Positions 34,497-58,000 are shown, counted from the first letter of the stretch. The stretch: DNA of 64,000 bases from Phaeosaccion multiseriatum (GCA_965112735.1 OZ218959.1:1364001-1428000), one strand, 5' to 3'. Notes: generated from the sequence alone by a model not told the origin. Program-made: numbers and translations.

Positions 34497-36793
34497 ATCT
34501 CTCTCTCTCTATCTATCTCTCAGTCCCTCTTCCTCTCTCTTCTCCCCTCCCATCTCGTACCGTATTGCTCTCCGCGAGTGTGTCCTGCGTTTGCTTGGAA
34601 AGCTTCCTGATGATGATGATGGCCATCGTCATGATATGTGGTGGGACAGATTGGACAGCAGCACGATGGAGGGAAGGTGAGAATGAGGAGGGAGGGAGGG
34701 AGGGAGGGAGGAAGAGGGAGAGGAAGACATACACCACCAACGCAGACGCACGCACCCACGCACGCACCCACACGCACCTGATGTACGTGCCGTAGTAGTT
34801 GGACAGGAGCACGATCGAAGGGACGCTCACAAAGGCCACGAGAGAGAGGCGCCACGAGACAGTGAACATAAAGAGGAGCGTGCCCACGGCAAGCACGAAG
34901 TTGCGGAGGAAGAAGTTGACGTTCAGCGAGATCTGTGAGTGGTCAGTAGAGTTGCAGTTGAAGTTGGAGTTTCAGTTTCCAGTTGGAGTTTTCAGTATAC
35001 ACACAACCCGATGAAGGCCTTTCACACACACACACACACGCACGCACATACACACACACACCCATGTTGGTGATACACACCTGATCGGCCACCTTGGCTG
35101 CGTCGGCGGAGAGGCGGGACGTGAGGTCGCCCACCTAGGGACAGTTTCAGTTCCAGTTTGGCAGGACAGTGAGACAAGTGGCCAGTGTTCAGTTTCAGCA
35201 GAAAAAAGAGCACTCGATGGATGGATAGGTTGGTGTCAGCCCCTATCCGCCTGAATTCTTCATGCCTCCGAATGTACATGCTTACACTCACGCTGTATGC
35301 CCATACGCTTGTACACGTTTCGCTCCACTTACCTTGGACACGTCGAAGAATCCAATTTCTTGCCGCACCAGGGCGTTGAAGAGGCGCTGCCTCAGCCGCA
35401 CATTCACTTTGCCCCCCACCACTGTAAAGATGCCGCCTCGGAGTCCCGTAAAGACGGCGCACACCAAGGCCCCACACACCAGGTAGAGGGTGTTGGTTCT
35501 GAACTCGTCCTGCTGACCACCAGTGACTACGTTGTCGATCATGAGGCCTGTAAAGTGCGGCAGAGCCACGTTGGCGACGGCCGCAACGACCAAACACACA
35601 AAGGCCAGGGCCATGAGTAAGTAGTCCTCACGCACGAGATCGACAAGGTCCCAGAGAGAGGCCTTGAACTGCACCGGCTTGTCACCACCACCCTCCTCGT
35701 CGTCAGCCTCCTCGTTTTCGCCTTGTCTTCTTGCTGCTCTTGCTCTTGCTGCACTTGCCGAGGCTGCCGCAGTTCGATGATAATGATGCGCCCTGCCTGC
35801 CTTTTCCATCCCCATGTCCTCTCCTTCCTCTCTCCTCGCTCTCGCTCTCTCCCCTGCGGCGACTTTGCAGCCGGTGGCGTCGCAGTAAGCCTCGTCCTCC
35901 TCGTCCTCGTCCTCCTCCTCCTCGTCCAGGTACCAAAGACCGCCGTCGTCGAGCACAGCAGTCGCCAGCACACCGCTCCCACTCCTACGGTCACTGCTGC
36001 TACTACTACTGCTACTACTGCTACTGCTGCTGCTGCTGGTGGTGGTGGTACACAGGCACCGGGTGGCCAGTCTGCCCAATCGGGCCCAGAGGATCTGCTC
36101 TGTGGCGGAGATGCACGCCGTCCATGTCACCAAGAGCCAGAAGTCCCACATCGTCAGGCCCGCTCCCTGGCGGCCCGTGCCATCGATGAGGCGACCCAGG
36201 CACTTGGCCGTGAGGAAGAGGAGCGACAGGGGACACGTCAGTCCGCTCGTGTTCACCGCAAAGGACAGACACCTTCTTATCCAGAGCCCACCGCTGCTGC
36301 CGTTACTGTTGTTGTTGCAGCGGCTGCGGCGGCGGCTGCCTCGCCCGCCACTTTCTCGAAGGTCGAGGCAGTCCTCACTGTTGCTGCTCTCTTCAGTATG
36401 CCAACTACCACGAGACACAAACTCCCTCTTCCCTGACCACCGCAGGCCCAGCCAACCGAAGAACAACACCGAGACTCGGAGCCCGCACAGCAGGACGAGG
36501 TCGAGTGAGGAGGAGCCAAAAGGGTATGACGTGCCCTTCTTCAGCCCCATGCACTCTCTCCACTGCCTCCCGCAGCTGGTCACTCCCAGGGCGAGCGTGA
36601 CGCTCAGGTCCAGGACGAGGAGCGAAAGACAAGCCGCTCGGAAGTAGCTCAGTCTCCTCAGCGACCTCGCAGCGTCCCGCTTGATGGCCGCTCGACGGCT
36701 GCGCCTGCTGCTGATCCTACCACTGCCACCACGTCTACCCAGCAGGGGCTGATACCCGGTATCGCCATCTCCATTCGCCAATCCCTGCTCCAT
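29397..36793 (-). CDS. ABC transporter family B half-transporter, TAP/ABCB9-like, with N-terminal extra membrane domain; 14 exons
   Basis: Transmembrane-domain motifs [43 protein letters not shown]. Walker [11 protein letters not shown]-loop VGQEPVLF, signature [10 protein letters not shown], Walker [17 protein letters not shown]-loop IAHRLSTV. Exons (minus strand) approx. 36793-35333, 35134-35081, 34932-34778, 34606-34561, 34295-34194, 33591-33460, 33235-33155, 32677-32564, ~32420-32238, ~32080-31940, ~31580-31519, ~31119-31040, ~30311-30229, 29773-29397 (TAG). Confidence 0.95.
30548..30945. repeat. 28-bp intronic minisatellite, about 14 copies
   Basis: Unit CCTACCCACCTAACCCCAACTACTACTA. 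Confidence 0.93.
33760..34147. repeat. (CCCAYATG)n 8-bp tandem repeat, intronic
   Basis: Alternating CCCATATG/CCCACATG units; related arrays at 1995-2370, 5407-5477 and 59361-59525. Confidence 0.93.
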
Positions 36794-37165
36794 GTCTCTC
36801 TCTCTCCGCTCAAGGCAACGTACTCACGCTTGTGCGTTTTCCGCGACTATGGAACATTCCCCTCCGCCTCGTCTCCTCGCTTGGGACCAGAAGCAGCACC
36901 AGCAGGAGTAGCAGTTCAGCAAGGAGTTAATTGACGAGACAAAGCGATGCTTCAAAAGAGAGAATAGAGAGAGAGAGGAGGAGAGAAGAAAAAATGGATG
37001 AAATTCAAACTTTTTTTTCCCCTCCTCCTGCTCCCTCCCCCACCTCTCGGATGAAGGACCAGCAAATTGGAAGCAAAGAGAAGAAGAAGGATCGATAAGT
37101 CAACCATCTCGTGAATCTCCAATAAGAGGACCGGTGGAGCACTCGCGGTCTTGGAGGGAAGGGAA
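36794..37165. promoter_or_regulatory. Probable bidirectional promoter region (372 bp) between the ABCB gene and the oxidase-methyltransferase gene
   Basis: Divergent ATGs at 36793 (-) and 37166 (+). No specific promoter element identified. Confidence 0.55.
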
Positions 37166-37970
37166 ATGGGCTCCAGAGGAAGCACTGCTCGATTGGACTC
37201 CTCCTCGGTGCTGAGTCACACAGCCCCGTTTGGCCTGGGCAGCACCTCGGAGGACGACTGGGAGATGGAGGTGGACGACGACCACCACCAGGAGGAGGAG
37301 CAGCTGCAGATGAGCATGAGCCGTGCCGACGAGAGCGACCGGCCGCTCCGAGTGGCCGTGGTGGGTGCAGGGGTGGCAGGGCTAGGTGAGTGAGGTATGA
37401 GCCTTCTTCGCATGTGTGGCTGCTATGTCTTTGTCTTCCCTGTGTCCTGATGTGTACTACAGGCATACTCCTCCGCTTTCTCTGTCGTCTTCCTTCGGAC
37501 TTACGGGACAGTATTGGGTCCGCGAAAGATACGAGCACGTCGTCAAGGGGGTAGGGCAGCTCTCGTCGTTCGCGCTTGGACTCCAGTCTGAGCTCCTCTT
37601 TCTCACGCCCTTCCGTCTAATCTCTCTGCGAGAGGGAGTCGTAGTCGGGTGTGGAGTGCTGCTGCTACTGCTGCCCTGGCACGACAGTGGGCTTCCACAC
37701 TACGCCGCGACGAACGTGCTCCCTTAACTCTTCCTTCCTTCCCTCATGATCCTCTTTGTACCCCCCCCCCATCGATCTTGAAATGATTATGAATGAACGA
37801 CTGAATGGATGGGACCCCTTTTCCTCTATCGAGCAGGAGCGGCGTGGCACCTCAGCCACTGCCCCAACGTCGAGGTTGTCCTCCTGGAGGCAGGCGACAA
37901 GGCCGGAGGACACGCCAACACCATTAAAGTACAGCCGGTACGTGCAGGACTCCTATTATTCGGTACTACG

Positions 37971-38001
<31 letters not shown>

Positions 38002-41000
38002 CGTGTGCGGTGTGTGTGTGTGTTCCCCTGTCTGTCGCTTTCTCTTCCCCGTGTTGCGTCCTGTCGGTCCCCTCTTCGAAACCCCCAAGACACCGAAAAC
38101 TGCCGCTGTGGGCATTCCATGGCACCCCAGTCCACCCACCCACCCTCCCACACCCCACCCTCCCAACACTCTAGTCGGAGAGCGAGGGCGAGGTAGCCGT
38201 GGACACGGGCTTCATGGTCTACAATGCTCAAAACTACCCCAACATGGAGGGGCTTTTCGCAGAGCTCGGAGTGGAGGGAGAGGACTCCGAAATGAGTTTC
38301 TCCGTAAGCTTAGATGGTGGAGCTATGGAGTGGGGCAGCGAGGGGCTGGGCGCGCTCCTCGCCACCAAGAAGAACGTTCTCCGCCCCGCCTTCTATCGGA
38401 TGCTCAAGGACTTGGTTCGGTAAGTGGGTGTTTAGTATGTCAGTGGGTGGGTGGGTGTGACTTGAGTGGCCTTGGGCCTTGCTGTTGACGTACTTGAATG
38501 AATGCACTTGCGCCTTGTCGTCGTTGACTTTCTTGAGTCACCGCTTCCCCTATTGCGCCAGCCAAGCAAACCAAGCCCTCCCCAATGAATGCAGTTTACA
38601 GTTTCAAGTGTCTCTCCACCTCTAACCCCTCTCCTCTCTGGGTTGTTTTAGCTCATCGTACACGTCCTATCTCTCGCTCTCTCCTCTCCACTCTCGCTGT
38701 CTCCACTCTCCCCTCTTGCTCTCTCCCTCTCTTTCCTTCACCCTCCTCGACCCCGTCGCTCTCTCCCTCGCTCTCCTCTCCCTCCCCCCCCCCACCACCC
38801 CCCCACCCACCTACATACACACAAACCAACAAGGTTCAACCGCGAGGCCTCTGAACTACTCCTCTTGCACACCCAAGACCCGCGCAGAGCGGTCACAGTT
38901 GGCGAATTCCTGAAACAACACGGCTACAGCCCCGCCTTCACCAAGACATATCTCGTGCCCATGTGTGCGGCGCTGTGGAGCTCCTCCTCGGCAGATATTA
39001 TGAACTTCAGCGCGTTCACAATGGTGTCTTTTATGCACAATCACTCCATGCTTCAGCTGTTTGGCCGACCACAGTGGAAGACACCGGCGGGGAGGAGTGT
39101 GACGTACGTGCAGGCGATTCTGAAACGGCTGAGGAGGGGACAGGGGAAGGAGGAGGAGGGTGGGGTTGAGGGGGAGGAGGGGGGTGCGGAGGAAGGAGGG
39201 GGGGGGGCTGTGAGGTTGGGCACAGAAGTGACTTCGGTAGAGAGGCAAGGGCAGGACATGTGGACGGTGCGAGTGAGACGAAGAAAGCAGGGGGAGGAGG
39301 GGGAGCAGGAGGGGGAGGGGGAGCAGGAGTCCAAGGGAGAGGAGAAGATAAAGCGGGGAGGGGAAGGAGCGGCAGAGGGAGGGCAAGGACAAGGACAAGG
39401 GCAAGGGCAAGAAGAGGAGGGGTCTGGCGAGGAAGGCTCGATGGGCAGTGAGGCGGAAGATCTTGGAGCCGTCCCACTCAGCGAAGAGGTGACCGGTGTT
39501 GCGGCTGTATCACCAACTGCTGCAGAGGAGCAACAGGGAGAGGAGGGCGGGCGAGGTGGAGGCGGGAAGGAAGAGGGCAGCCCGAGCCCTGTCGACGGCG
39601 ACGACGACGCGGATGAGGAGGACATGCACTTCGACCAGGTGCGTGGGTGCGTGTGCGTGGTGTCGACGTCGATGTCGATTTTCTCTCGAGTGACAATTCA
39701 GTCAGTGTCCGTTTATCCTTCGTGGGGAGGGGGAGGGTGATGGATGCTCCACACCAACTCAAACACGGGATCATCAGCCTGAGACTCGGAATCGATCAAC
39801 TGGAACTGAAAACTGGCTCTGTTGATCTGAAACTGACAACTGTGGACAGGTGATCTTCGCCTGCCCCGCGGACGTAACGCTGCGGCTACTGCGCTCCTCC
39901 GCCACTGCCCATGAGGCAGCGGCGCTCGGGGCCTTCCAGTTCGAGGACAACACAGTCGGTGAGGGAGGGGGAGGGAGGGAGGGAGCGAGGGGAGAGAGAC
40001 GGGGGGGGGGGGGGGTGGAGGAAGGGGGGAGTGAGGGAGTGGGAGGGTAGGTGGGGAGGGTGGCAGTGAGTGAGTCAGTGAAGTGAGTGATTGAGTGAGT
40101 GAGTGAGTGAGTGAGTGAGTGAGTGAAGTGAGTGCGTGGGGCGTGACCTCGAAAACCCCACCCCAACCCGTCGTGCCTATCCCGCTCCCCAAACCAGTGG
40201 TGCACACCGACGAGCGCCTCATGCCCCAAAGCCGGGCTGCCTGGAGCGCGTGGAACTACATCGGTACCTCCGAAGGCATCGACCGGGCGGAGAGTAAGCC
40301 CGTCTTCGTCACGTACTGGCTCAACAGGCTACAGAACCTCAAGGGAAAAGACGGGACCCCCTTAACCACCAACATCTTTGTGAGTCTCAATCCCACCCTG
40401 GCTCCGAGCCGGGATAAGGTGTTGCGTGAGATTGAGTATCGGCACCCGCAATTCTCCCCTGCGGCGGATAAGGCTCGAAGACAGGTGTGTGTGTGTGGGT
40501 GGGTTGGGTGTGCTTGTGTTTGTGTGTTTGTGTGTGTGTGTGTGTGCATGGGCGTGTGGGCGTGTGCGTGTGGGCGGAGGTGTTGGTGTGGGTGGGGGCT
40601 GAGGCGGGGATGCGTGTGGTGGGTGGGTGGATGGGGTAGGTGGATCGATGGAACCTTTCCAAACTAGCAAGCTGAAGCTGAAACGCTCTCTTGCTCTCTC
40701 TCTCTCGCTGTGTGCACGTGTATGTATGTGCGTGTGTGCGTGTGTGCGTGTGTGTGTGTGTGCGCGCGCGCGTGCTCCAGGTGGCTGCCATGAGCGGCAA
40801 GAGGGGCTTGTGGTTCGCGGGGGCGTGGCTCGGCTACGGCTTTCACGAGGACGGTCTGAGAACGGGCTTGCAAGCAGCCACCTCCATCTCGGGCAGGCCC
40901 GTGCCATGGGTCCCGCAGCAACAACAGCAGCAGCAGTCAGTGATACAGCAGGAGGAGGTGAGAGGGGCGAGGGAGGGAGAGGAGAAGGAGGTGGTGGAGG

Positions 41001-43055
41001 TGGAGGAGGAGGAGGAGGAGGAGGAGGAGGAGGAGGAGGAGGAGGAGGAGGAGGAGGAGGTGAGAGGGGCGAGGGAGGGAGAGGAGAAGAAGAAGAAGAA
41101 GAAGAAGGAGGAGGAGGAGGAGGAGGAGGTGGAGGAAGAGGAGGAGGTGGAGGAAGAGGAGGAGGACGTGAGGGGGGCTCCTTGCTCATGTACCCCCCCC
41201 ATTCTTGGCCCTCCCCCCCCCTTACCTTCTCCCCCCCCCCCCCCCAGACGCAGACGGGCGGCAGTAGCCCCCTCAGCAGCAGTGCCATTGGTGCAACGGT
41301 TGATGGCGTAGAGCCCGCCCCCACCGGGCCGTCGCTAATGTCAAGCAGCATGTCCAGCAGTGGCAGTGGCAGCAGCAGCAGCAGCAGCAGCAGGGGGCGG
41401 CAACACCGCTCCTCCCTTGTTCTCCCCCAGCCTGCACTCCCCACATCACACTCCGGTACGTCACTGTTTGTATGTCAGTTTCATTCTCAGTCGTGTCTTA
41501 GTATCAGTTTCAGTTTTGTGCCCCCCCCCACCTCCCCTAGTCTCCCCTCCCCACACCTCCCTCCGGTACGTCATGTTACGTACGGAGGTGTACGATCATG
41601 CCGTGCGCTTCTGTATCACCAACTGCTATCCTCTGCCGTATCGCCAACGCCGTTTTGCTCCACTGTGTCACCAACTGCCATCCTTTGTTGTACCACCCCT
41701 CCTTCTCCCCCCAATCCTTCTCCTCCTTCTCCCCCTCTCCTCCAGGCCTGCGGGGTGGAGTCAGTGGCCTGCTCCGCTCCGCAGTCACAGGCCTCGCTAC
41801 ACGCAGCGTATGTGCTTTCCTACGCCACACTATCTCAGTCGGGCAGCTTACACTCATCTATCCCGATGGACGGACGGTGCGGTTCGGAGAGGGTATGGCA
41901 GTGGATGGGATCACCCCTTGCAGGGAGGAGCAGAACATTGCGGTGCGCGTGTTCGATTGGTGGTTCTTTGTTCGAATCGCTCTTGAATACGATCTCGGCC
42001 TGGCCAGGTGAGGGAGGGGAGGGAAGGGGAGAGGAGGAGAGGCGAGACGAGGGGAGGCGAGACGAGGGGAGGGGAGGGGAGGGGAGGGGAGGGGAGGGGA
42101 GGGGAGGGGAGGGGAGGGGAGGGGAGGGGTGATGCTTAGTAAGCGTGAAGTTCGTCCCTTTGTCTTGTCGCCTTGATCGACTGACCTTCACTCTTTCCTT
42201 CCCACTCTCTCACTCTCTCCGTCCCTCCCTCCCCTCTCTGCCGCGGGGCGCAGGTCGTACATAGCTGGGGAGTGGATGATTGAAGGAGACACCCGGTACG
42301 CAGACGGATTGCGAAGGCTCTTCCTCCTCTTCGTGGACAATAGAGACACCTCCAAGAGCAACGCCTTGTCGCCGGGTACGCACATGCACTCACGCACATA
42401 CACACGCTAACGCACACACACATTCACACACACACACACACACGCCACTGCTCTTCTCTCCTCCCTCCGGCTCACCCTCCTCCTCCCCCCCCAACCCACC
42501 TTCAACACCTTCGACAGCCAAACTCTTCACGGCGTGGATAGGCTACGGCTTGAACTTCCTTCGCTACAAGCTCTCCATGGACAACAGCATCCGAGGTGCG
42601 CCATTTGTGATGTGTCGGTGTGGGTCCGCGTGTGGGCCGTGCGTGTACCCCTTGGGTCCAGTCCCCGCTCCCTCCTCCTCTCTGCACTCTCGGCACTCTC
42701 TGCGCAGGAAGGAAGTGTGACGCGGACGTTTTCCTCCCTCCCCTCTCTCTCAAGGTATTCCTGTAAGTCAATAAAGTTCCCTCCCCTCCTTCCCTCCCTC
42801 CCTCCCTCCCTCCCTCCCTCTCTCTCCCTCCCTCCTGCCTCCTCCTCCTCCTTGCCCCCCAGGCTCTCGCAGCAACATTGAGGCCCACTACGACCTGTCC
42901 AACGATTTGTTCACCACCTTCCTCGACACTCGGCACCTCATGTACAGCAGTGCCATCTTCGACGCTTCGCTAGACGTCGCCAAGCCGGGGCGGAACTTGG
43001 TGTTTAGAGATACGCTGGAGGCTGCTCAGGTGAAGATGGAAGTTTCCTCGCCCTC

Positions 43056-43101
<46 letters not shown>

Positions 43102-43935
43102 TCCCTCTCCTCTCGCTCGCCCTCTCTCTCTCTCTCATCCCCGTCCCTCCGTCTCCCTCCCTCTGTCCGTCTCCCCTCTTCTCTCAATTCTCTCCTCCCA
43201 GACGCGCAAGATCGACTTGCTGATTAAGCGCTCTCGCGTGGAGGCCCACCACAAGCTGCTGGACATTGGCTTCGGCTGGGGGGGGGTGGCCATTCGGGCA
43301 GCGGAGACCATCGGCTGCCAGGTGAGGCTTGACCTGGCCACTGCCATCCTCAGCTTTGTTTCCTTTGGTTCTTTCTCTAGTCACCGACTGATGCCTGTGT
43401 GGGTGCGTGCGTGGGTGCGTGCATGGGTGCGTGCGTGAGCTGCGTGCCTGCCCTGGGGTGGGCCTCTGACTTGCTCCACCCCCTCCTCCCTCCTCCTCCT
43501 CCTCCTCCTCCTCCTCCTCCTCCTTCTCCTCCCCCTCCTCCCCCTCCTCCTCCCCCTCCTCCTCCTCCTCCTCCTCCTCCTCCTCCTCCTCCTCCTCCTC
43601 CTCCTCCTTCTCCTCCTCCTCCTCCTCCTCCTCCTCCTCCTCCTCCTCCTCCTCCTCCTCCTCCCCCTTACCCCCCTCCTCCCTTTTCCTCCCCAAGGTG
43701 GTAGGCATCACCCTCTCTATCGAACAGAAGCAGCTGGCCGAGCGCCTGGTGCGTGAGAAGGGCCTAGAGCACCTAGTCACCTTTGAACTCGTGGACTATC
43801 GCATCTTTTCCTCGCAACACAAGGCCGAGTTCGACAGCATCATCTCTTGCGAAATGATTGAGGCAGTGGGTCACAGGTGAGTGCGTTGGTGGTACGGAAG
43901 ATGTGGTTTATTATGTTTGTTTGGGTGTCAGGACA

Positions 43936-43997
<62 letters not shown>

Positions 43998-45777
43998 GTC
44001 AGAGACAGACAGACATTTGGTGTCGAGACAGAGAAAGAAGACAGAACAGAGAGTGTCGCTATGGACCTGGTGGGAAGGGATGGGTGTTCGCTCGCGCGGC
44101 TCCTGTTTAAGAGCATATCGGCCCTGCCTTTGCCCCATTCATTGCCGGGCCTTGCCTGTCCCCCACTTCTTTCCCTTCAACCCGGCCGGAACCATCCCCC
44201 TCACTTCCCCCCATCCCTCCCTCCCCGCCTCCCTCCTCCCCCGCCTCCCTCCCTCCCTCCCTCCCTCCTTCCCTCCCTCCCTCCCTCCCTCCCTCCCTCC
44301 CTCCCTCCCTCCCTCCCTCCCTCCCTCCCTCCCTCCCTCCCTCCCTTCCTCCACTCCTGTCCCTCGGTCCGTCCCTCCCTCCCTCCACTCCACTCCTCTC
44401 CCTCCCTCCCTCCCTCCCCCCCCCCCCCAGGCACCTGGGCAGCTTCTTCGAGAGTGTGAACACTTTGCTCAAGCCCAACGGCGTGTTTGTAATGGAGGCC
44501 ATCACCACTCCGGAGAGCAGATATGAGGTACGGCTCTGTCTCCTCCCCCAAGGCAACCAACCAACCAACCAACCAACCAACCAACCAACCAACCAACCAA
44601 CCAACCAACCAACCAACCAACCAACCAACCAACCAGCCAACCAACCAACCAACCAACCAACCAACCAACCAACCAACCAGCCAACCAACCAACCAGCCAA
44701 CCAACCACCCACCCAACCAACCACCCATCCATCCACCCACCCACTGATCCACCCACCCACTGATCCACCCACACCCACCCCTCACCCACCGACCCTGTAT
44801 CACCAACAGGAGTACCTCAAGAGCACGGACTTCATCAACACCATCATCTTCCCCGGCAGCTGCTGCCCCTCCCTCACGGCCCTTCTCGAGGCCATGAGCA
44901 AGCGATCCGAGCTGTCTCTGGAGGGCTACGACAATATTGGGATGCACTATGCTGAAACGCTGAGGATGTGGAGGATGCGTTTCAACAACAGCGAGACGAG
45001 GGTGCGTAGTAAGAGGAGAGGAGAGGAGGGGAGGGGATGGAAGGGAAGGGAGGGAGGGGGGGGGAAGGGGGGGGGAGGGAAAGGGGAGGGGAGGAGAGGA
45101 GAGGAGGAGAGGAGACAAGCCTTTATGTGAATCGCATCCTGATGCCACGCACTTTGTTGGGATCCCTCCCTCCTTGCTTGCTGCGCTTTGGTCCGCTCAG
45201 GTTCGCTCGTTCGGCTTCGACGGCATGTTCATTCGCTGCTGGAACTATTACTTCACCTACTGCGAGGTGAGGGAGTGAGTGAGGGAGGGAGGGAGGGAGG
45301 GAGTGAGTGAGTGAGTGAGTGAGTGAGTGACTGAGTGAGTGAGTAAGGGAGTGAGGGAGGGAGTGAGTGAGTGAGTGAGTCAGTCAGTGAGTGAGTGAGT
45401 GAATGAGTGAGTGAGTGGGGGAGTAGGGGGGCTGGCCCGACTGTGTCACCCCTGTGCAAAACACACGATAGAAAAGCCGAGGGAAGGAGAGTACACATGT
45501 GCTCTGCTCTCTTCCTCCATCATGTTGGGTTGGGGTGCCAAATGCTCACAGGGCACCGCCCACTCCGCTCCCTCCCTCCCCTCCCTCCCTCCCTCCCTCC
45601 CTCCCCTCATCTCTTCCCTCTCCCCGCCTATCTCGCCTGCTGTTACTCACTGGCCACCCTCATCAGGCGGGCTTCCACAGCCAGACGGAGGGCTGTCTCA
45701 TTCTCACCTTCTCACGACCGGGCAACGAAAGGCTGCTCGACTCCTCGGATGTGCTCTCCATACTGGGCCACCACTGA
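37166..45777 (+). CDS. Fused FAD-dependent oxidoreductase (amine-oxidase-like) + cyclopropane-fatty-acyl-phospholipid synthase family SAM methyltransferase; 18 exons
   Basis: N-half: [18 protein letters not shown] (GxGxxG), [77 protein letters not shown]-half: [79 protein letters not shown]. Exons approx. 37166-37385, 37837-37937, 38175-38419, 38834-39638, 39850-39958, 40198-40484, 40781-40957, 41248-41455, 41746-42007, 42254-42375, 42518-42595, 42863-43029, 43202-43321, 43698-43876, 44431-44527, 44810-45001, 45201-45266, 45667-45777 (TGA). No stop codon between the two halves. Confidence 0.93.
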
Positions 45778-46248
45778 GACCCGCTCAGAGACCCACATTG
45801 TGTTGGGCGGCCAGAGACCCAATCAGGGTAAGGATAGTAGTAGGTGGGGAGAGAGATGAAGATGGAGATGGAGATGAGGCCCACCTCCTTTCTTCTCGGA
45901 GGTCCGTGCGTGGAGTGAATGAATCAAGTAGTATTATGTAATGGGGGGAAGTAAGGAATAAGATCCGATAGATACATGCCTTTTGGTGCCATAGGATGCC
46001 ATAGGATTCGTAGCATGGTAGAGGACATGACGGGCTGTGTCCGTTTGCATTCATGCATCTCTCTTTTCTCTCTCTCTCTCTCTCTCGAGTATGAGATATT
46101 TCGATTCATGGAGCGAGTTTATTTTTAATTAAAAATAATTACAGTTTGATTAATCTTTGGCACAGTTTTTGTGTCTACTGACTGGACTCTCGTGTCCAAT
46201 GCATGTTTTTGCATGTGCGGCGGCAGCGCGTGGAGGTATTCACACGGC

Positions 46249-53360: not shown

Positions 53361-53977
53361 TGCCTGCCTGCCTGCCCATATACCTGCTTACCTGTATGCC
53401 TGTCTACATATCTGCCTGCATGTCCATATGCCTGTCTGTCTGGCTGTCTGCCTGTCTGGCTACGCGTGCCTGCCTACCTCCCTCCCTCCACTCAACCCCT
53501 CCCTTCCTCTCCTCAACCCCCACCCCCTCCCCCCCAAGGTGCTCTTCCAAGCCCTTCGACAACGCGCTACCGCCGGCAAACAGCTCATCATACACATGGA
53601 GAGCTGCGATATGAGTAACGAAGACACGTCCCTCTTCCAAACCAACAACCCTTCTGGCGCGTATAGCCTCAATCTCGCTGACCCATATGACTACTCACAG
53701 GTGGGTGTAGTATGTCAATGGGTGGGTGTAGTATGTCAATGGATGTGTGTGTGTGTGGGTATGTGTGTGTGTGGGTATGTGTGTGTGTGCGTGTGAGTGT
53801 GTGTGTGCGTGTGTGTGTGAGTGTGTGTGTGTGCATGTGCATGCGTGTGTGCGTGTGCGAATCAAGCCACCCCATACACCCCAATAGGGAGGGCGGGCGG
53901 GGTGAATCACCATCCACTGCCATCCTCTGCTTGACGGGTTGTGTGTTCTTCGCGAGGCATGGCTTTGCAAGTTGATG

Positions 53978-54009
<32 letters not shown>

Positions 54010-55044
54010 CACACACTCGACCCCACACACACACAGGCTCGGATGCTGCTGGCGATGGCGAACACACGCGCGGCTTCGAACTTCGTCGGTGACGTACAGT
54101 TTCGAGCCCCGGGCACGAAGCCGTGGCGGAAGCTTGTGCTCAGTCGGGGCTCCACACGGAGCAGCAGCGAGAGAGCGCAATGGAAGAGCGCCGCGAAGGC
54201 GTTGCTGAGGGATGTGTGGGTGAGCCCTCCTGCTGCTGCTGTATCACCAGCTGCTCTGGCTGCGGCGGCTACTGCGGCTGCGAAAGCGGCTGCGGCTGCG
54301 GCTGCGAGAGCTGCTGCCAGCCCTAGTGCCCCAGTAGACAGTGCTACGCAAGTAGGTGATACAGCAGGAGGAGGAGAAGCAGCAGCAGCAGCCGCCGCCG
54401 CCGCCGCAGCCGCAGAAGGAGGAGGAGCCAGACGGAGTAATAGCACTACTAGTATGGCCAGAAGAGGAAGTGCTAGCATTAGCGTGAGCAGCAAGGAGGG
54501 CGAGCAAGACCCCCCCCCACCCCCACTCGTGTGCCGGGAGCAGGTACGGGCCCTACTCAACGCGCTCACTCTCCATCCAGAGGAAGCTTACCTCCAGGCA
54601 GTTGTAGAGCGGTTCTGTGAGCGGCGAGCGACGGAGCTACGAGTGCAGGCCAGGCAAAAACAGCGGCTGGAGAAGCAGCTTCTCGCGGAGAAGCGGAGGA
54701 AGGAGAAGGAGGCGGCAAGGGTACGGCGAGAGGCCAAGAAGCAAGCGAGGGAGGAGCGGCGAAGAGCCAAGCTTGCGGCAGCGTTGTTGGGGTATGCTGA
54801 CGGAGGAGGAGGAGCAGCAGCAGGAGGCGGAGGAGGGATAAGTGAAGGTGGTGTTAGTGTTGGTGGCGATGGCAGTGGACAGATGTCATCCTCCATCGTG
54901 ACCGCATCTTCTACGACCATTGGCACCACCAGTAGCGGCATCGATGGAGGCGCCAGTGGGGGGGGCGTTCATGATGGCGACGACGACGACGATGATGATG
55001 ATGATGATGGTGATGGTGATGATGATGATGATGATGATGATGAG

Positions 55045-55075
<31 letters not shown>

Positions 55076-58000
55076 GAGGATGGGGCGAGGAGGAGGAGGA
55101 CGAGGATGACGACGAGGACGAGGTAGACTCGAGCGGTCGACGCATCGTTCCAGACGTTGGTGGAGCAGGAGAAGGAGCAGGAGGAGGAGGAGGAGGAGGA
55201 GGAGCAGGAGGAGGAGCAGGAGGAGGAGGGGAAGGATCAGCAGGAGCAGGGGATGACACAGACTCCGTCACTCGTCGGAGCAAACACAAGCACTATCACG
55301 TAACCGTGCAGAACGAGGGACAGGTGGTGGGGTATCTCTTCGAAGTCATGTTTCGAGTCGCAGATGTGGATGGGTCGGGTTTCATTGACTGCCGAGAGTT
55401 CACCTCCTTACTGCAAGGGATGGGGTATCACATCACGCTGGACGTGGCTCGACACTGTATCGCGGAGTACGACATTGATAAGTCGGGCACCATCGAGACG
55501 GAGGAATTCACTGACTTCATGATGAATGAGTATCTTGCCGCACCCCCGCAGAGCCCCGGGGTGGTGATGGAGGGGGGCAGGGAGTGGGAGGTGAGAGTTT
55601 GAGTGTGGGTTTGGAGTTTGGAGGGAGGGGACAGGGGGGGGAGGGAGGAGCGCGGAGGGAAGGAGAGAGGGACAGAAGATGAACGAGGGAGGGAGGGAGG
55701 GAGGGAGGGAGGGAGGGAGGGAGAGAGGGAGGGAGGGAGGGAGGGAGGGAGGGAGGGAGGGAGGGACGGAACCTTCGAAAGACTGAGGTGGAAGGCCGAA
55801 TTGCGCACCACAGTTGTCAAATCGCGGCTCTGAATCCCGTCCAACCTACGTAAAGCCTTCTCTTCCTCCCTCCCTCCCTCCCTCCCTCCCTCCCTCCCTC
55901 CCTCCCTCCCTCTCTCCCTCCCTCCCTCCCTCCCTCCCTCCCTCTCTCCCTCCCTCCCTCCCTCCCTCCCTCCCTCTCTCTCTCCCTCCCTCCCTCCCTC
56001 CCTCTCTTCCTCCCTCCCTCCCTCCCTCCCTCCCTCCCTCCCTCTCTCTCTCCCTCCCTCCCTCCCTCCCTCCCTCCCTCCCCCCCCCTACCCGCAGATG
56101 CCTGAGGCCGGCCACCTCCGCTTCACCTTCGAGGTCGAACCGAGCCAACCCGGAGCCGTCGAGATCGCCTCTGACCAGGCCGTCGAGGCTGTCATTAAGA
56201 ACATCTCTCTCACTGCCCAGACCGAACAGGAGAGACTGAGGATGTTTCAATTGGCGTGTGAGAACACAGACTTCTATATGACCTCTCTCAACGCGCAGTC
56301 CATCTTGCAGGAGGTAAGAAAGATGTGACGGGAAACACTTGCTGCTCCTCCTCCTCCCTTCCTCGCCCTTCTCCTCCCCTCTCCCTCCCCTCCCGGAGGC
56401 CGGAGGGTTCGCTTGAGCTTGACAATATATATATATATATATATACGCTTTCGTGTTGAGTGACTCCCACTCACTCTCTCTTACGATTCCTCTCTCACTA
56501 CGGTTTCACTTACTGCCTAACCACAACCGACCAATCAACCCACCACCCCTCCACCCACCCAATCAACCAACCCACACGCAACCCAACTGTTAACACCACC
56601 CCTCCACCCACCCAATCAACCAACCCACACACAACCCAACTGTTAACACCACCCCTCCACCCACCCAATCAACCAACCCACACGCAACCCAACTGTTAAC
56701 ACCACCCCTCCACCCACCCAATCAACAAACCCACACGCAACCCAACTGTTAACACCACCCCTCCACCCACCCAATCAACCAACCCACACACAACCCAACT
56801 GTTAACACCACCCCTCCACCCACCCAATCAACCAACCCACACACAACCCAACTGTTAACACCACCCCTCCACCCACCCAATCAACCAACCCACACACAAC
56901 CCAACTGTTAACACCACCCCTCCACCCACCCAATCAACCAACCCACACGCAACCCAACTGTTAACACCACCCCTCCACCCACCCAATCAACAAACCCACA
57001 CACAACCCAACTGTTAACACCCCCCCTCCACCCACCCAATCAACAAACCCACACGCAACCCAACTGCTAACACCACCCCTCCACCCACCCAATCAACAAA
57101 CCCACACGCAACCCAACTGTTAACACCACCCCTCCACCCACCCAATCAACAAACCCACACGCAACCCAACTGTTAACACCACCCCTCCACCCACCCAATC
57201 AACAAACCCACACGCAACCCAACTGTTAACACCACCCCTCCACCCACCCAATCGTCATAACCTATCTGTTACTGGCGTTGCTCTCTCTCTCCCTCCCTCT
57301 CCCTCCTCTCCTCTCCTCTCCTCTCCCCCTACAGTGGAACAACGGCCTTAACGTGTTGGACATCATGGAGCTGCTCCTCCCCCAACTGGCATCGGCCAGG
57401 AACGTCATTGCACTTATTGAGAACAACTTGGATTTCGCTCAAAAGCTGGAGCTCAGGAAGCGATTGGGGCAGGCGTGGATGCCGCTCATTGGGCTACCCA
57501 CGGGCTTCTACTCGCTTGATCTCTCCAATAGGGCGGATCGCACGGCAGCCAAGGTGGGGAGGGTATGTGGGTGGGGAGGGAGGGAGCGAGGGAGGGAGGC
57601 GGGAGGGAAAGGGAGGGAGGGAGGGAGGGAGGGAGGGAGGGAGGGAGGGAGGGAGGGAGGGAGGGAGGGAGGGAGGGAGGGAGGGAGGGAGGGAGGGAGG
57701 GAGGGAGGGAGGGAGGGAGGGAGGGAGGGAGGGAGGGAGGGAGGGAGGGAGGGAGGGAGGGAGGGAGGGAGGGAGGGAGGGAGGGAGGGAGGGAGGGAGG
57801 GAGGGAGGGAGGGAGGGAGGGAGGGAGGGAGGGAGGGAGGGAGGGAGGGAGGGAGGGAGGGAGGGAGGGAGGGAGGGAGGGAGGGAGGGAGGGAGGGAGG
57901 GAGGGAGGGAGGGAGGGAGGGAGGGAGGGAGGGAGGGAGGGAGGGAGGGAGGGAGGGAGGGAGGGAGGGAGGGAGGGAGGGAGGGAGGGAGGGAGGGAGG

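What the first reader, a model, noticed from the sequence alone, without database searches (positions are those of the whole stretch)
37166..45777. Oxidoreductase-methyltransferase fusion: candidate algal furan fatty acid (UfaD-UfaM-like) enzyme
Seen: one spliced ORF joins a complete FAD oxidoreductase to a CFA-synthase-family methyltransferase. Established: in Rhodobacter sphaeroides, furan fatty acids are made by UfaM (CFA-like methylase), UfaD (FAD desaturase of this type) and UfaO (DUF1365); plant cyclopropane synthases (Sterculia, cotton) carry a similar N-terminal oxidase domain; algae make furan fatty acids. By eye, motifs deviate from true cyclopropanases: YSSA instead of YSCA, VMEAIT where the bicarbonate-ligand His usually lies, and DIGFGWGG instead of DIGCGWGG. 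Inference: methylation plus desaturation rather than ring closure. No UfaO-like gene is in this window.
Basis: partly seen in the sequence, partly recalled or inferred. Interest (0 to 1): 0.72.

Follow-up and report, generated by a model that had tools for sequence, protein, structure and literature searches.

The report
Algal oxidase-methyltransferase fatty-acid enzyme gene
This alga has a real 18-exon gene that joins a flavin oxidoreductase to a fatty-acid methyltransferase, but the same fusion is already known from plants and many algae, and its product (furan-fatty-acid precursor or cyclopropane fatty acid) cannot be told from the sequence.

Summary
Window 37166-45777 (+) carries one 18-exon gene (about 1,139 aa, or 1,017 aa with a shorter exon 4). 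It joins a complete UfaD-type amine-oxidase-fold FAD domain to a complete CMAS/CFA-synthase-family methyltransferase. A linker exon carries the motif LVLPQP, which relatives share.

The three motif deviations are real: Ser at E. coli C139, Glu at H266, and DIGFGWGG. They do not argue against ring closure:
- Proven cotton cyclopropane synthases have Ser and Gln at these positions.
- All 78 bacterial CMAS genes encoded beside UfaD/DUF1365-like genes have Gln at 266.
- The Ser/Phe/Glu signature is the usual state in ochrophyte algae (50 of 131 fusions).

The fusion has been known since 2002 as plant "CPS". The furan-fatty-acid reading was published for its Arabidopsis member (UFAM1/UFAD1) in 2024 and is still untested. 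The gene groups with Tribonema and Chrysoparadoxa, next to brown algae.

I found no RNA evidence for this organism, and no DUF1365 gene in the window. The rest of the genome could not be searched.

Verdict: a new member of a known kind. The product is undecided. I favour methylation plus desaturation (about 0.45) over cyclopropanation (about 0.3). Earlier notes of this scan hold nothing on this gene family.

The parts
37166..45777 (+). Whole coding region of the fusion gene: 18 exons, about 1,139 aa (1,017 aa with the shorter exon 4)
   Evidence: Spliced model is colinear with relatives' fusion proteins; all junctions GT..AG; one open frame
37166..37385 (+). Exon 1: start codon, acidic N-terminal tail, FAD-binding motif [11 protein letters not shown] (37349-37381)
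   Evidence: First ATG after an in-frame stop; donor GTGAGT
37837..37937 (+). Exon 2 (donor uncertain; three options score alike)
   Evidence: Pfam NAD_binding_8/Amino_oxidase; junction scores
38181..38419 (+). Exon 3, oxidase domain
   Evidence: tblastn 60-64% identity to brown-algal proteins; donor GTAAGT
38834..39638 (+). Exon 4, oxidase domain, with a roughly 160-aa acidic/Gly low-complexity insert (about 39132-39623). An alternative donor at 39272 would skip the insert and the conserved 'FDQV' strand
   Evidence: Open frame 38865-39740; 'MHFDQ|VIFACP' fits relatives' 'FDNVIFACP'; the alignment score alone prefers 39272
39850..39958 (+). Exon 5, oxidase domain
40198..40484 (+). Exon 6, oxidase domain
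40781..40935 (+). Exon 7: end of the oxidase domain ([12 protein letters not shown]) and start of the linker; donor uncertain (40909-40939)
   Evidence: 83% identity to P0007; junction options
41346..41455 (+). Exon 8: Ser-rich linker exon with the conserved motif LVLPQP (41416-41433); acceptor uncertain (41314-41358)
   Evidence: The motif is shared with P0156, P0157 and P0007, and is degenerate in P0158 and P0159; coordinates
41746..42007 (+). Exon 9: N-terminal (lipid-binding) part of the CFA-synthase-like half
   Evidence: Aligns to E. coli Cfa from residue 28 and to relatives
42254..42375 (+). Exon 10 (donor uncertain)
42518..42595 (+). Exon 11
42863..43029 (+). Exon 12: start of the CMAS catalytic domain; YSSA at 42943-42954, Ser 42949-42951 at the place of E. 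coli C139
43202..43321 (+). Exon 13: SAM-binding motif DIGFGWGG (43262-43285)
   Evidence: Pfam CMAS
43698..43876 (+). Exon 14: [10 protein letters not shown], Glu 43860-43862 at the place of E. coli E239 (kept)
   Evidence: Pfam CMAS 6.7e-10
44431..44527 (+). Exon 15: VMEAIT (44489-44506), Glu 44495-44497 at the place of E. coli H266; Ile268 kept
   Evidence: same placement for relative P0158 by HMMER against 6bqc and 5z9o
44810..45001 (+). Exon 16: Tyr 44948-44950 at the place of E. coli Y317 (kept)
   Evidence: Pfam CMAS 1.1e-10
45201..45266 (+). Exon 17
45667..45777 (+). Exon 18 and stop codon

Best explanation
This is one nuclear gene of an ochrophyte alga. It is closest to Tribonema and Chrysoparadoxa and is sister to the brown-algal copies. 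It is the local member of the eukaryotic 'plant-type CPS' / UFAM1-UFAD1 family.

Shown:
- The protein has a complete FAD-binding amine-oxidase-fold domain of the kind that bacteria encode beside DUF1365 and a CMAS gene.
- A conserved linker follows.
- The C-terminal half is a complete CFA-synthase-like domain. It has the SAM motif and three of the five bicarbonate-site residues (E239, I268, Y317). Ser replaces C139 and Glu replaces H266.

Inferred mechanism:
- The C-terminal domain transfers the methyl carbon of SAM to a cis double bond of an acyl chain on a membrane or storage lipid.
- The resulting carbocation is deprotonated to an allylic methyl-branched trans-alkene, as in UfaM.
- The fused FAD domain then dehydrogenates the neighbouring C-C bond to a methylated conjugated diene, as in UfaD.
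- A separate DUF1365 (UfaO-type) oxygenase would close this diene into a furan fatty acid.

The fusion itself is the main argument. A redox domain kept intact next to the methyltransferase from bacteria (as an operon) to plants and algae (as a fusion) suggests that it works on the methyltransferase's product.
For: Gene and fusion:
- Domains by Pfam.
- End-to-end alignment of each half to stand-alone bacterial proteins.
- 18 canonical introns and one frame.
- A linker motif shared with relatives.
- 51-59% identity over the aligned parts to fusion proteins of brown algae, Chrysoparadoxa and Tribonema, and 38-48% to land plants.
- Transcriptome-derived (MMETSP) fusion proteins of Rhizochromulina, Octactis and Detonula carry both Pfam domains.
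- Placement inside a well-supported stramenopile clade of fusions.

Link to the furan-fatty-acid pathway:
- In 79 of 80 bacterial loci found with the oxidase, it is followed by DUF1365 and then a CMAS gene.
- Lemke 2020 (PMC7380195) showed that such an oxidase (UfaD), a DUF1365 protein (UfaO) and a CMAS-family methylase (UfaM) make 9M5 furan fatty acid.
- In R. palustris the three genes have consecutive numbers (RPA2569-2571).
- Omata 2024 (PMC10940516) reports 34% and 38.5% identity of the Arabidopsis fusion to UfaM and UfaD. It also found the fusion on lipid droplets together with a DUF1365 protein.
- In Chlamydomonas, CFA1, CFA2 and a DUF1365 gene are induced together by singlet oxygen (PMC4067076).
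- A eukaryotic CMAS homologue, C. elegans FCMT-1, makes methyl-branched rather than cyclopropane products (PMC10876521).
- Furan fatty acids occur in algae (PMC6213525).
- The widespread plant clade (GhCPS3 and the Arabidopsis homologues) gave no cyclopropane product (PMC3132707).
Against: - The only members of this fusion family with a demonstrated product (Sterculia CPS, cotton GhCPS1/2) make cyclopropane fatty acid, and GhCPS1/2 share the window's Ser at C139 (PMC3132707).
- No enzyme with Glu at position 266 has been characterised.
- No DUF1365 gene lies in the window or beside the orthologues examined. The rest of the genome could not be searched.
- UfaM and UfaD themselves were not on hand, so orthology to them was not tested.
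- In R. sphaeroides the CMAS gene inside the UfaD operon (RSP1089) is dispensable for furan fatty acid (PMC7380195).
- The plant hypothesis is still listed as putative in 2026 (PMC13247531).
- There is no RNA evidence for this organism.
Confidence: 0.45

Rival explanations
1. It is a cyclopropane fatty acid synthase, like Sterculia CPS and cotton GhCPS1/2. The C-terminal domain closes the ring on a lipid-bound monoene. The oxidase domain only stabilises or enhances the enzyme, or desaturates the ring to a cyclopropene.
For: All biochemically proven members of the fusion family are cyclopropane synthases. GhCPS1/2 have Ser at C139 and lack His266, as the window does. Deleting the oxidase domain leaves 30% of activity (PMC3132707). 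E239, I268 and Y317 are kept. The best solved-structure matches are CFA synthases.
Against: The proven enzymes form a Malvales-specific group. The widespread plant clade gave no cyclopropane product (PMC3132707). The window has Glu, not Gln, at 266. An auxiliary role does not explain why an intact FAD domain is kept across kingdoms. The relatives P0158 and P0163 score far below the cut-offs of all NCBIfam Cfa equivalogs.
Confidence: 0.3
2. It makes another modified lipid. Examples are a mid-chain methylene or methyl-branched fatty acid that the FAD domain reduces or isomerises, or a C-methylated non-acyl olefin such as an isoprenoid or a polyene.
For: The CMAS family gives varied outcomes (methyl-alkene, hydroxy-methyl, cyclopropane); solved relatives include MmaA1, MmaA4 and UmaA. 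FCMT-1 gives methyl-branched acids (PMC10876521). The Ser139/Glu266 pair has never been characterised and tends to change together with Cys/Gln.
Against: No specific evidence points to another substrate. The N-terminal lipid-binding part of CFA synthases is conserved. The bacterial operon context matches the furan-fatty-acid genes.
Confidence: 0.15
3. The two halves are separate genes or transcripts, or the gene is a silent pseudogene, and the single ORF is an artefact of my splicing model.
For: No transcript evidence for this organism. Four junctions are uncertain (2, 4, 7 and 9). The linker and the exon 4 insert are low-complexity sequence.
Against: There are 18 in-frame exons with canonical sites and no stop. 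The linker motif is conserved in relatives. More than 130 relatives, including transcriptome-derived ones, have the same architecture. Conserved residues of both domains are intact.
Confidence: 0.05

Closest known systems
Plant-type cyclopropane synthase family / Arabidopsis UFAM1-UFAD1 (AT3G23510, 'AtUFAMD1'); Sterculia foetida CPS; cotton GhCPS1-3
   Same: Same two-domain architecture and order. 38-48% identity to land-plant members over the aligned parts. Same clade of eukaryotic fusions. His266 is lost. E239, I268 and Y317 are kept. Ser at C139 as in GhCPS1/2 (PMC3132707).
   Different: Glu instead of Gln at position 266 and Phe in the SAM motif. A long acidic insert in the oxidase domain and a Ser-rich linker. 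About 270 aa longer than the roughly 865-aa plant proteins. Plants and this alga sit in separate subclades.
Bacterial UfaD / UfaO / UfaM furan fatty acid pathway (Cereibacter sphaeroides RSP1091, RSP1090, RSP2144; R. palustris RPA2571-2569)
   Same: The N-terminal half is 37-40% identical to oxidases encoded in oxidase-DUF1365-CMAS operons, and the C-terminal half is 34% identical to the operon's CMAS. The proposed chemistry is the same.
   Different: Two of the three activities are fused here. No DUF1365 partner was found nearby.
E. coli cyclopropane fatty acyl phospholipid synthase (Cfa, PDB 6bqc)
   Same: Same fold family, including the N-terminal lipid-binding part. 30% identity over residues 28-372. 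SAM motif, E239, I268 and Y317 are conserved.
   Different: No oxidase domain in E. coli. C139 is Ser and H266 is Glu here. Close relatives of the window protein score 186-202 bits against the Cfa equivalog model, whose cut-off is 400.
Chlamydomonas CFA1 / CFA2 (singlet-oxygen-induced 'cyclopropane fatty acid synthases')
   Same: Algal genes annotated as members of the same enzyme family. They are co-induced with a DUF1365 gene (PMC4067076) and are suspected of a furan-fatty-acid role (PMC8491031).
   Different: Green lineage. Their sequences, and whether they carry the oxidase domain, were not examined here. No expression data exist for the window's gene.

Membership tests
Eukaryotic oxidase-CMAS fusion (plant-type CPS / UFAM1-UFAD1) | N-terminal FAD/NAD(P)-binding amine-oxidase-fold domain, complete | tested here: met
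   Pfam hits. Bacterial oxidases align over residues 15-414. GxGxxG, GGH, RPxW, HTD and GxxxGxGFHEDG are conserved when compared with the invariant columns of A1.
Eukaryotic oxidase-CMAS fusion (plant-type CPS / UFAM1-UFAD1) | C-terminal CMAS (PF02353) domain with the N-terminal lipid-binding extension | tested here: met
   Pfam CMAS on three exons. E. coli Cfa residues 28-372 are covered.
Eukaryotic oxidase-CMAS fusion (plant-type CPS / UFAM1-UFAD1) | Both domains in one polypeptide | tested here: inconclusive
   The genomic model gives one frame with a conserved linker exon, and relatives' transcripts are fused. No RNA of this organism was found.
Eukaryotic oxidase-CMAS fusion (plant-type CPS / UFAM1-UFAD1) | Phylogenetic placement among the fusions | tested here: met
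   The methyltransferase-domain tree puts it inside the stramenopile clade (SH-aLRT 99) of a eukaryotic fusion clade (94).
Bona fide cyclopropane fatty acid synthase (E. coli Cfa type) | Bicarbonate-site residues C139, E239, H266, I268 and Y317 | tested here: not met
   Ser at 139 and Glu at 266; E239, I268 and Y317 are kept (relative P0158). Proven plant cyclopropane synthases also fail this test (PMC3132707), so failure does not exclude ring closure.
Bona fide cyclopropane fatty acid synthase (E. coli Cfa type) | Score above the NCBIfam equivalog cut-off | tested here: not met
   Tested on the close relatives P0158 and P0163: 186-202 bits against a cut-off of 400 (NF008686), and 224-232 against 600 (NF053839).
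UfaM (unsaturated fatty acid C-methylase making 11Me-12t-18:1) | CMAS-family methylase functionally tied to UfaD and UfaO | tested here: inconclusive
   It is tied to a UfaD-like domain by fusion. No UfaO/DUF1365 gene is in the window. The genome was not searchable.
UfaM (unsaturated fatty acid C-methylase making 11Me-12t-18:1) | Orthology to RSP2144 / RPA2569 and a methyl-alkene product | not tested
   The reference sequences were not obtainable: the genome scan returned only gammaproteobacteria. The product needs an assay.
UfaD (FAD-dependent acyl desaturase) | Member of the oxidase family encoded next to DUF1365 and CMAS | tested here: met
   37-40% identity to oxidases that lie in oxidase-DUF1365-CMAS operons in 79 of 80 loci.
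UfaD (FAD-dependent acyl desaturase) | Desaturates a methyl-branched monoene to a conjugated diene | not testable with these tools
   Needs an enzyme assay. Direct comparison with RSP1091 was not possible.

The most novel reading that the evidence does not exclude
The Ser139/Glu266 form that dominates in ochrophyte algae could be a distinct catalytic variant. In it the enzyme's own glutamate would take the place of the bicarbonate ion as the base. Together with the fused UfaD-like domain it would make the methylated conjugated diene that leads to furan fatty acids. These genes in diatoms, brown algae and their kin would then be the long-sought source of the furan fatty acids that accumulate in marine food webs and fish oil.
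Probability: 0.2. Interest if true: 0.7.

Novelty: new member of a known kind. Interest (0 to 1): 0.32.

Why it matters
Furan fatty acids are radical scavengers found in fish and fish oil. They are made by plants, algae and bacteria, but no eukaryotic biosynthetic enzyme has been demonstrated. The plant candidates are still called putative in 2026 (PMC13247531).

This gene shows that the candidate methylase-desaturase fusion is present and intact in an ochrophyte alga. Comparison with relatives shows that ochrophytes mostly carry an uncharacterised active-site variant (Ser139/Glu266). That gives a concrete target for expression and mutagenesis.

The gene itself is an ordinary member of a widespread family. 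The motif-based argument for its product does not hold.

Tried and rejected
- RNA support. The 5-6% word shares were therefore repeats, not transcripts.
- Getting UfaM, UfaD and UfaO themselves. The single genome-contig scan returned the 80 best matches to a gammaproteobacterial query. No Cereibacter or Rhodopseudomonas was among them. PMC4143029 and PMC7380201 are not held.
- DUF1365 in this lineage. A profile built from 79 bacterial DUF1365 ORFs found nothing in the window (best E = 6.2). It found nothing beside the orthologues in Discosporangium, Tribonema, Fragilariopsis or Chrysoparadoxa. The profile is weak on split eukaryotic genes. The Atlas look-up gave only bacterial clusters. No long DUF1365 fusion ORF existed that would have let the word search skip the bacterial length range. 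Earlier scan notes hold none of the words duf1365, cyclopropane or furan.
- Triple fusion with DUF1365. The long relatives P0097, P0122, P0130 and P0088 have no such domain; three of them have C-terminal extensions without a Pfam match.
- A conserved neighbour. A fatty-acid desaturase gene sits just upstream of the Chrysoparadoxa orthologue, but nothing like it is in the window.
- Coupled change of residues 139 and 266. It always goes in the same direction, but with too few independent events (sign test p about 0.125).
- I left the third word search and the structure predictions unused. Neither could decide the product, and the spliced protein cannot be handed to those tools by reference.

Full report
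**What is in the sequence**

The window is eukaryotic: GC is about 58% and the introns are full of microsatellites. Between 37166 and 45777 on the + strand, stop-free stretches carry two families in order. NAD_binding_8/Amino_oxidase lies at 37809-37997. CMAS (PF02353) lies at 43217-43435, 43698-43877 and 44456-45127.

Stand-alone bacterial oxidases found with one exon (P0002-P0006, 414-426 aa) align over their residues 15-414 to 37839-40894. E. coli Cfa (L001:2414-3559) aligns from residue 28 to 328 over 41892-44983. With the spliced model the match runs to residue 372. Both halves are therefore complete.

**Gene model**

A profile-free search of 1.84 billion representatives with exon 4 (window:38832-39137) gave 2,208 relatives. 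In all, 155 proteins had been fetched by then (P0001-P0155). Of these, 29 also carry a Cfa-like domain and are 539-1,227 aa long.

The best long one is P0007, from the brown alga Discosporangium. It and five other full-length fusions align colinearly across the whole interval. I resolved each junction by listing GT/GC donors and AG acceptors that keep the frame open, and scoring the joined peptide against five or six relatives.

The result is 18 exons, all GT..AG, many with GTGAG/GTAAG donors. They form one frame from the first ATG after an in-frame stop (37166) to the stop at 45775-45777.

Four junctions are uncertain:
- The exon 2 donor.
- The exon 4 donor. Position 39638 keeps a roughly 160-aa acidic insert and the conserved 'FDQ|VIFACP' strand. 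Position 39272 skips both.
- The exon 7/8 junction.
- The exon 10 donor.

The protein is 1,139 aa, or 1,017 aa with the short exon 4.

Between the domains lies a small exon (about 41346-41455) that encodes a Ser-rich linker with LVLPQP (41416-41433). The motif recurs at the same place in P0156, P0157 and P0007, and in degenerate form in P0158 and P0159. A conserved, in-frame linker is the best evidence within the window that the halves form one polypeptide.

**Transcript evidence**

There is none for this organism. The RNA runs offered (word shares 0.05-0.06) matched only 37-45-base microsatellite pieces inside introns, with no exon coverage and no intron joints.

Indirect support comes from relatives. 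Transcriptome-derived (MMETSP) proteins of Rhizochromulina (P0161), Octactis (P0020) and Detonula (P0176) carry both Pfam domains in one ORF. P0161 and P0020 align along the whole gene.

**Who else has it**

A word search with P0007 found 210 proteins at E of 1e-20 or better. They come from:
- brown algae (Pylaiella, Ectocarpus, Sphacelaria);
- Chrysoparadoxa, Tribonema, Fibrocapsa and dictyochophytes;
- diatoms (Fragilariopsis, Amphora, Detonula);
- land plants, where the proteins are about 865 aa and often named cyclopropane-fatty-acyl-phospholipid synthase.

The window's model has these identities:
- 51-59% to the brown-algal, Chrysoparadoxa and Tribonema proteins;
- 38-48% to spinach and moss;
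- 34% to a bacterial operon-linked CMAS;
- 30% to E. coli Cfa;
- 37-40% to bacterial oxidases.

In a maximum-likelihood tree of the methyltransferase domain (73 rows) the window groups with Tribonema and Chrysoparadoxa. That group is sister to the brown-algal copies, inside a stramenopile clade (SH-aLRT 99). The eukaryotic fusions form a clade (94) apart from the bacterial operon-linked enzymes.

**Bacterial context**

A genome scan with an alignment of the bacterial oxidases (A1) returned 80 gammaproteobacterial loci. In 79 of them the oxidase gene is followed on the same strand by a DUF1365 gene and then a CMAS gene.

In Shewanella (L003) the row reads: SnoaL-like, short-chain dehydrogenase, amine oxidase, DUF1365 (E = 1.3e-80), CMAS, DUF2878, chalcone-isomerase-like, DUF3833.

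This matches the operon that Lemke et al. dissected (PMC7380195):
- RSP1091 = UfaD, an NAD/FAD-binding desaturase.
- RSP1090 = UfaO, a DUF1365 protein that inserts O2.
- The methylase UfaM (RSP2144) lies elsewhere in R. sphaeroides, but in R. palustris its gene number is consecutive with the other two (RPA2569-2571).
- The CMAS gene inside the R. sphaeroides operon (RSP1089) was dispensable.

**The motif argument**

By MAFFT against E. coli Cfa:
- Ser (42949-42951) stands at C139.
- Phe stands in DIGFGWGG (43262-43285).
- Glu (44495-44497) stands at H266.
- E239, I268 and Y317 are kept.
A HMMER alignment of the relative P0158, which has the same signature, to solved CFA synthases agrees.

The deviations do not separate 'methylase' from 'cyclopropanase':
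- Yu et al. 2011 (PMC3132707) report that the active cotton cyclopropane synthases GhCPS1/2 have Ser at C139, and give Gln at H266 for GhCPS1 and GhCPS3.
- GhCPS3, which keeps Cys, produced no cyclopropane fatty acid.
- In my table, all 78 operon-linked bacterial CMAS have Gln at 266, with Ser 53, Ala 17 and Cys 8 at 139.
- Among the 131 eukaryotic-type fusions that could be scored, the pairs are Cys/Gln 58, Ser/Glu 50, Ser/Gln 21 and Cys/Glu 2.
- The full signature Ser-Phe-Glu-Glu-Ile-Tyr is the standard state in Chrysoparadoxa, Tribonema, Fibrocapsa, Rhizochromulina and diatoms (49 proteins).
- Phe in the SAM motif also occurs in ferns and brown algae.

So loss of His266 marks the whole oxidase-associated clade, and the window is typical of its lineage. 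What remains open is Glu rather than Gln at 266, because no Glu-type enzyme has been characterised. Glu/Gln changed about six times on the tree and Ser/Cys about 18 times. Where both differ between independent pairs they go the same way (3-4 against 0), but the events are too few (p about 0.125).

**What it most likely does**

Shown: an intact SAM-dependent CMAS domain fused to an intact FAD oxidoreductase of the UfaD family. Everything about the product is inferred.

I favour methyl transfer to a lipid-bound cis-monoene, then FAD-dependent dehydrogenation to a methylated conjugated diene, the precursor that a DUF1365 oxygenase turns into a furan fatty acid. The reasons are:
- The redox domain is conserved next to the methyltransferase, as an operon in bacteria and as a fusion in eukaryotes.
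- The bacterial pathway is proven (PMC7380195).
- The Arabidopsis fusion and a DUF1365 protein lie together on lipid droplets (PMC10940516, PMC12712439).
- Chlamydomonas CFA1/CFA2 and a DUF1365 gene are co-induced by singlet oxygen (PMC4067076).
- A eukaryotic CMAS homologue is known to do C-methylation (PMC10876521).
- Furan fatty acids occur in algae (PMC6213525).

Against this:
- Every member of the fusion family with a measured product makes cyclopropane fatty acid, and these members share the window's Ser139 (PMC3132707).
- The plant proposal is still 'putative' in 2026 (PMC13247531).
- I found no DUF1365 gene in the window or beside four orthologues, and no triple fusion.
- I could not compare with UfaM and UfaD themselves.

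My odds are about 0.45 for the methylase-desaturase reading, 0.3 for cyclopropanation, 0.15 for another product and 0.05 for an artefact or separate genes. The remainder is unassigned.

**Comparison with what is known, and novelty**

The fusion has been described since the Sterculia enzyme (Bao et al. 2002, cited in PMC3132707). Its link to the bacterial oxidase/CMAS gene pair was noted in 2011. The UfaM+UfaD reading of the plant fusion was published in 2024 (AtUFAMD1), and the algal angle was raised for Chlamydomonas (PMC8491031).

NCBIfam models place the window's close relatives below the cut-off of every Cfa equivalog. This fits a separate subfamily, not E. coli-type Cfa.

The gene is therefore a new member of a known kind. 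I found no paper on the stramenopile members or on the Glu266 variant. Only eight papers in the library mention DUF1365, none about stramenopiles. That is the modest new point. Earlier notes of this scan hold none of the words duf1365, cyclopropane or furan, and notes near this window are unrelated.

Noticed in passing
window 35291-36823 (-): First large exon of an ABC transporter gene (ABC_membrane, E = 7.7e-15) lies head-to-head with the fusion gene. Its start codon at 36793 is about 370 bp from the fusion gene's ATG, so the two may share a promoter region.
   Followed up: partly
window about 39132-39623 (+), inside exon 4: An acidic/Gly-rich low-complexity stretch of about 160 aa stays in frame inside the oxidase domain, between two conserved strands. 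Relatives, including transcriptome-derived ones, also carry 80-126 extra residues here. Whether all of it is translated is unsettled (alternative donor at 39272).
   Followed up: partly
methyltransferase domains of 131 fusion proteins (alignment): Residues at E. coli positions 139 and 266 occur almost only as Ser/Glu, Cys/Gln or Ser/Gln; Cys/Glu appears twice. Glu/Gln switched about six times, always together with Ser/Cys where both differ, but the events are too few for significance (p about 0.125).
   Followed up: partly
L085:7576-9256 (+), Chrysoparadoxa australica: A fatty-acid desaturase gene (PF00487) sits directly upstream of the orthologous fusion gene on the same strand. Nothing similar is in the window.
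   Followed up: partly
L003:5818-11826 (+) and 78 other bacterial loci: The bacterial oxidase-DUF1365-CMAS core is very stable (79 of 80 loci). In the one locus annotated (L003, Shewanella) it sits in a longer row with SnoaL-like, short-chain dehydrogenase, DUF2878, chalcone-isomerase-like and DUF3833 genes. ORFs of matching sizes flank the core in five other loci examined.
   Followed up: partly
P0097, P0122, P0130 (1,161-1,224 aa): Three deep-branching fusion proteins have 300-370 extra C-terminal residues with no Pfam match at 1e-5.
   Followed up: no
window 40100-45850, introns: Metatranscriptome runs listed as holding 5-6% of the gene's words matched only microsatellite tracts, for example 43396-43437, 41698-41737 and 42191-42239. 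This warns that small word shares on this repeat-rich genome are not evidence of expression.
   Followed up: yes
window 53935-55599 (+): A long open frame with an EF-hand pair near its C-terminal end (E = 1.9e-11) after a low-complexity acidic region. It appears unrelated to the finding.
   Followed up: no
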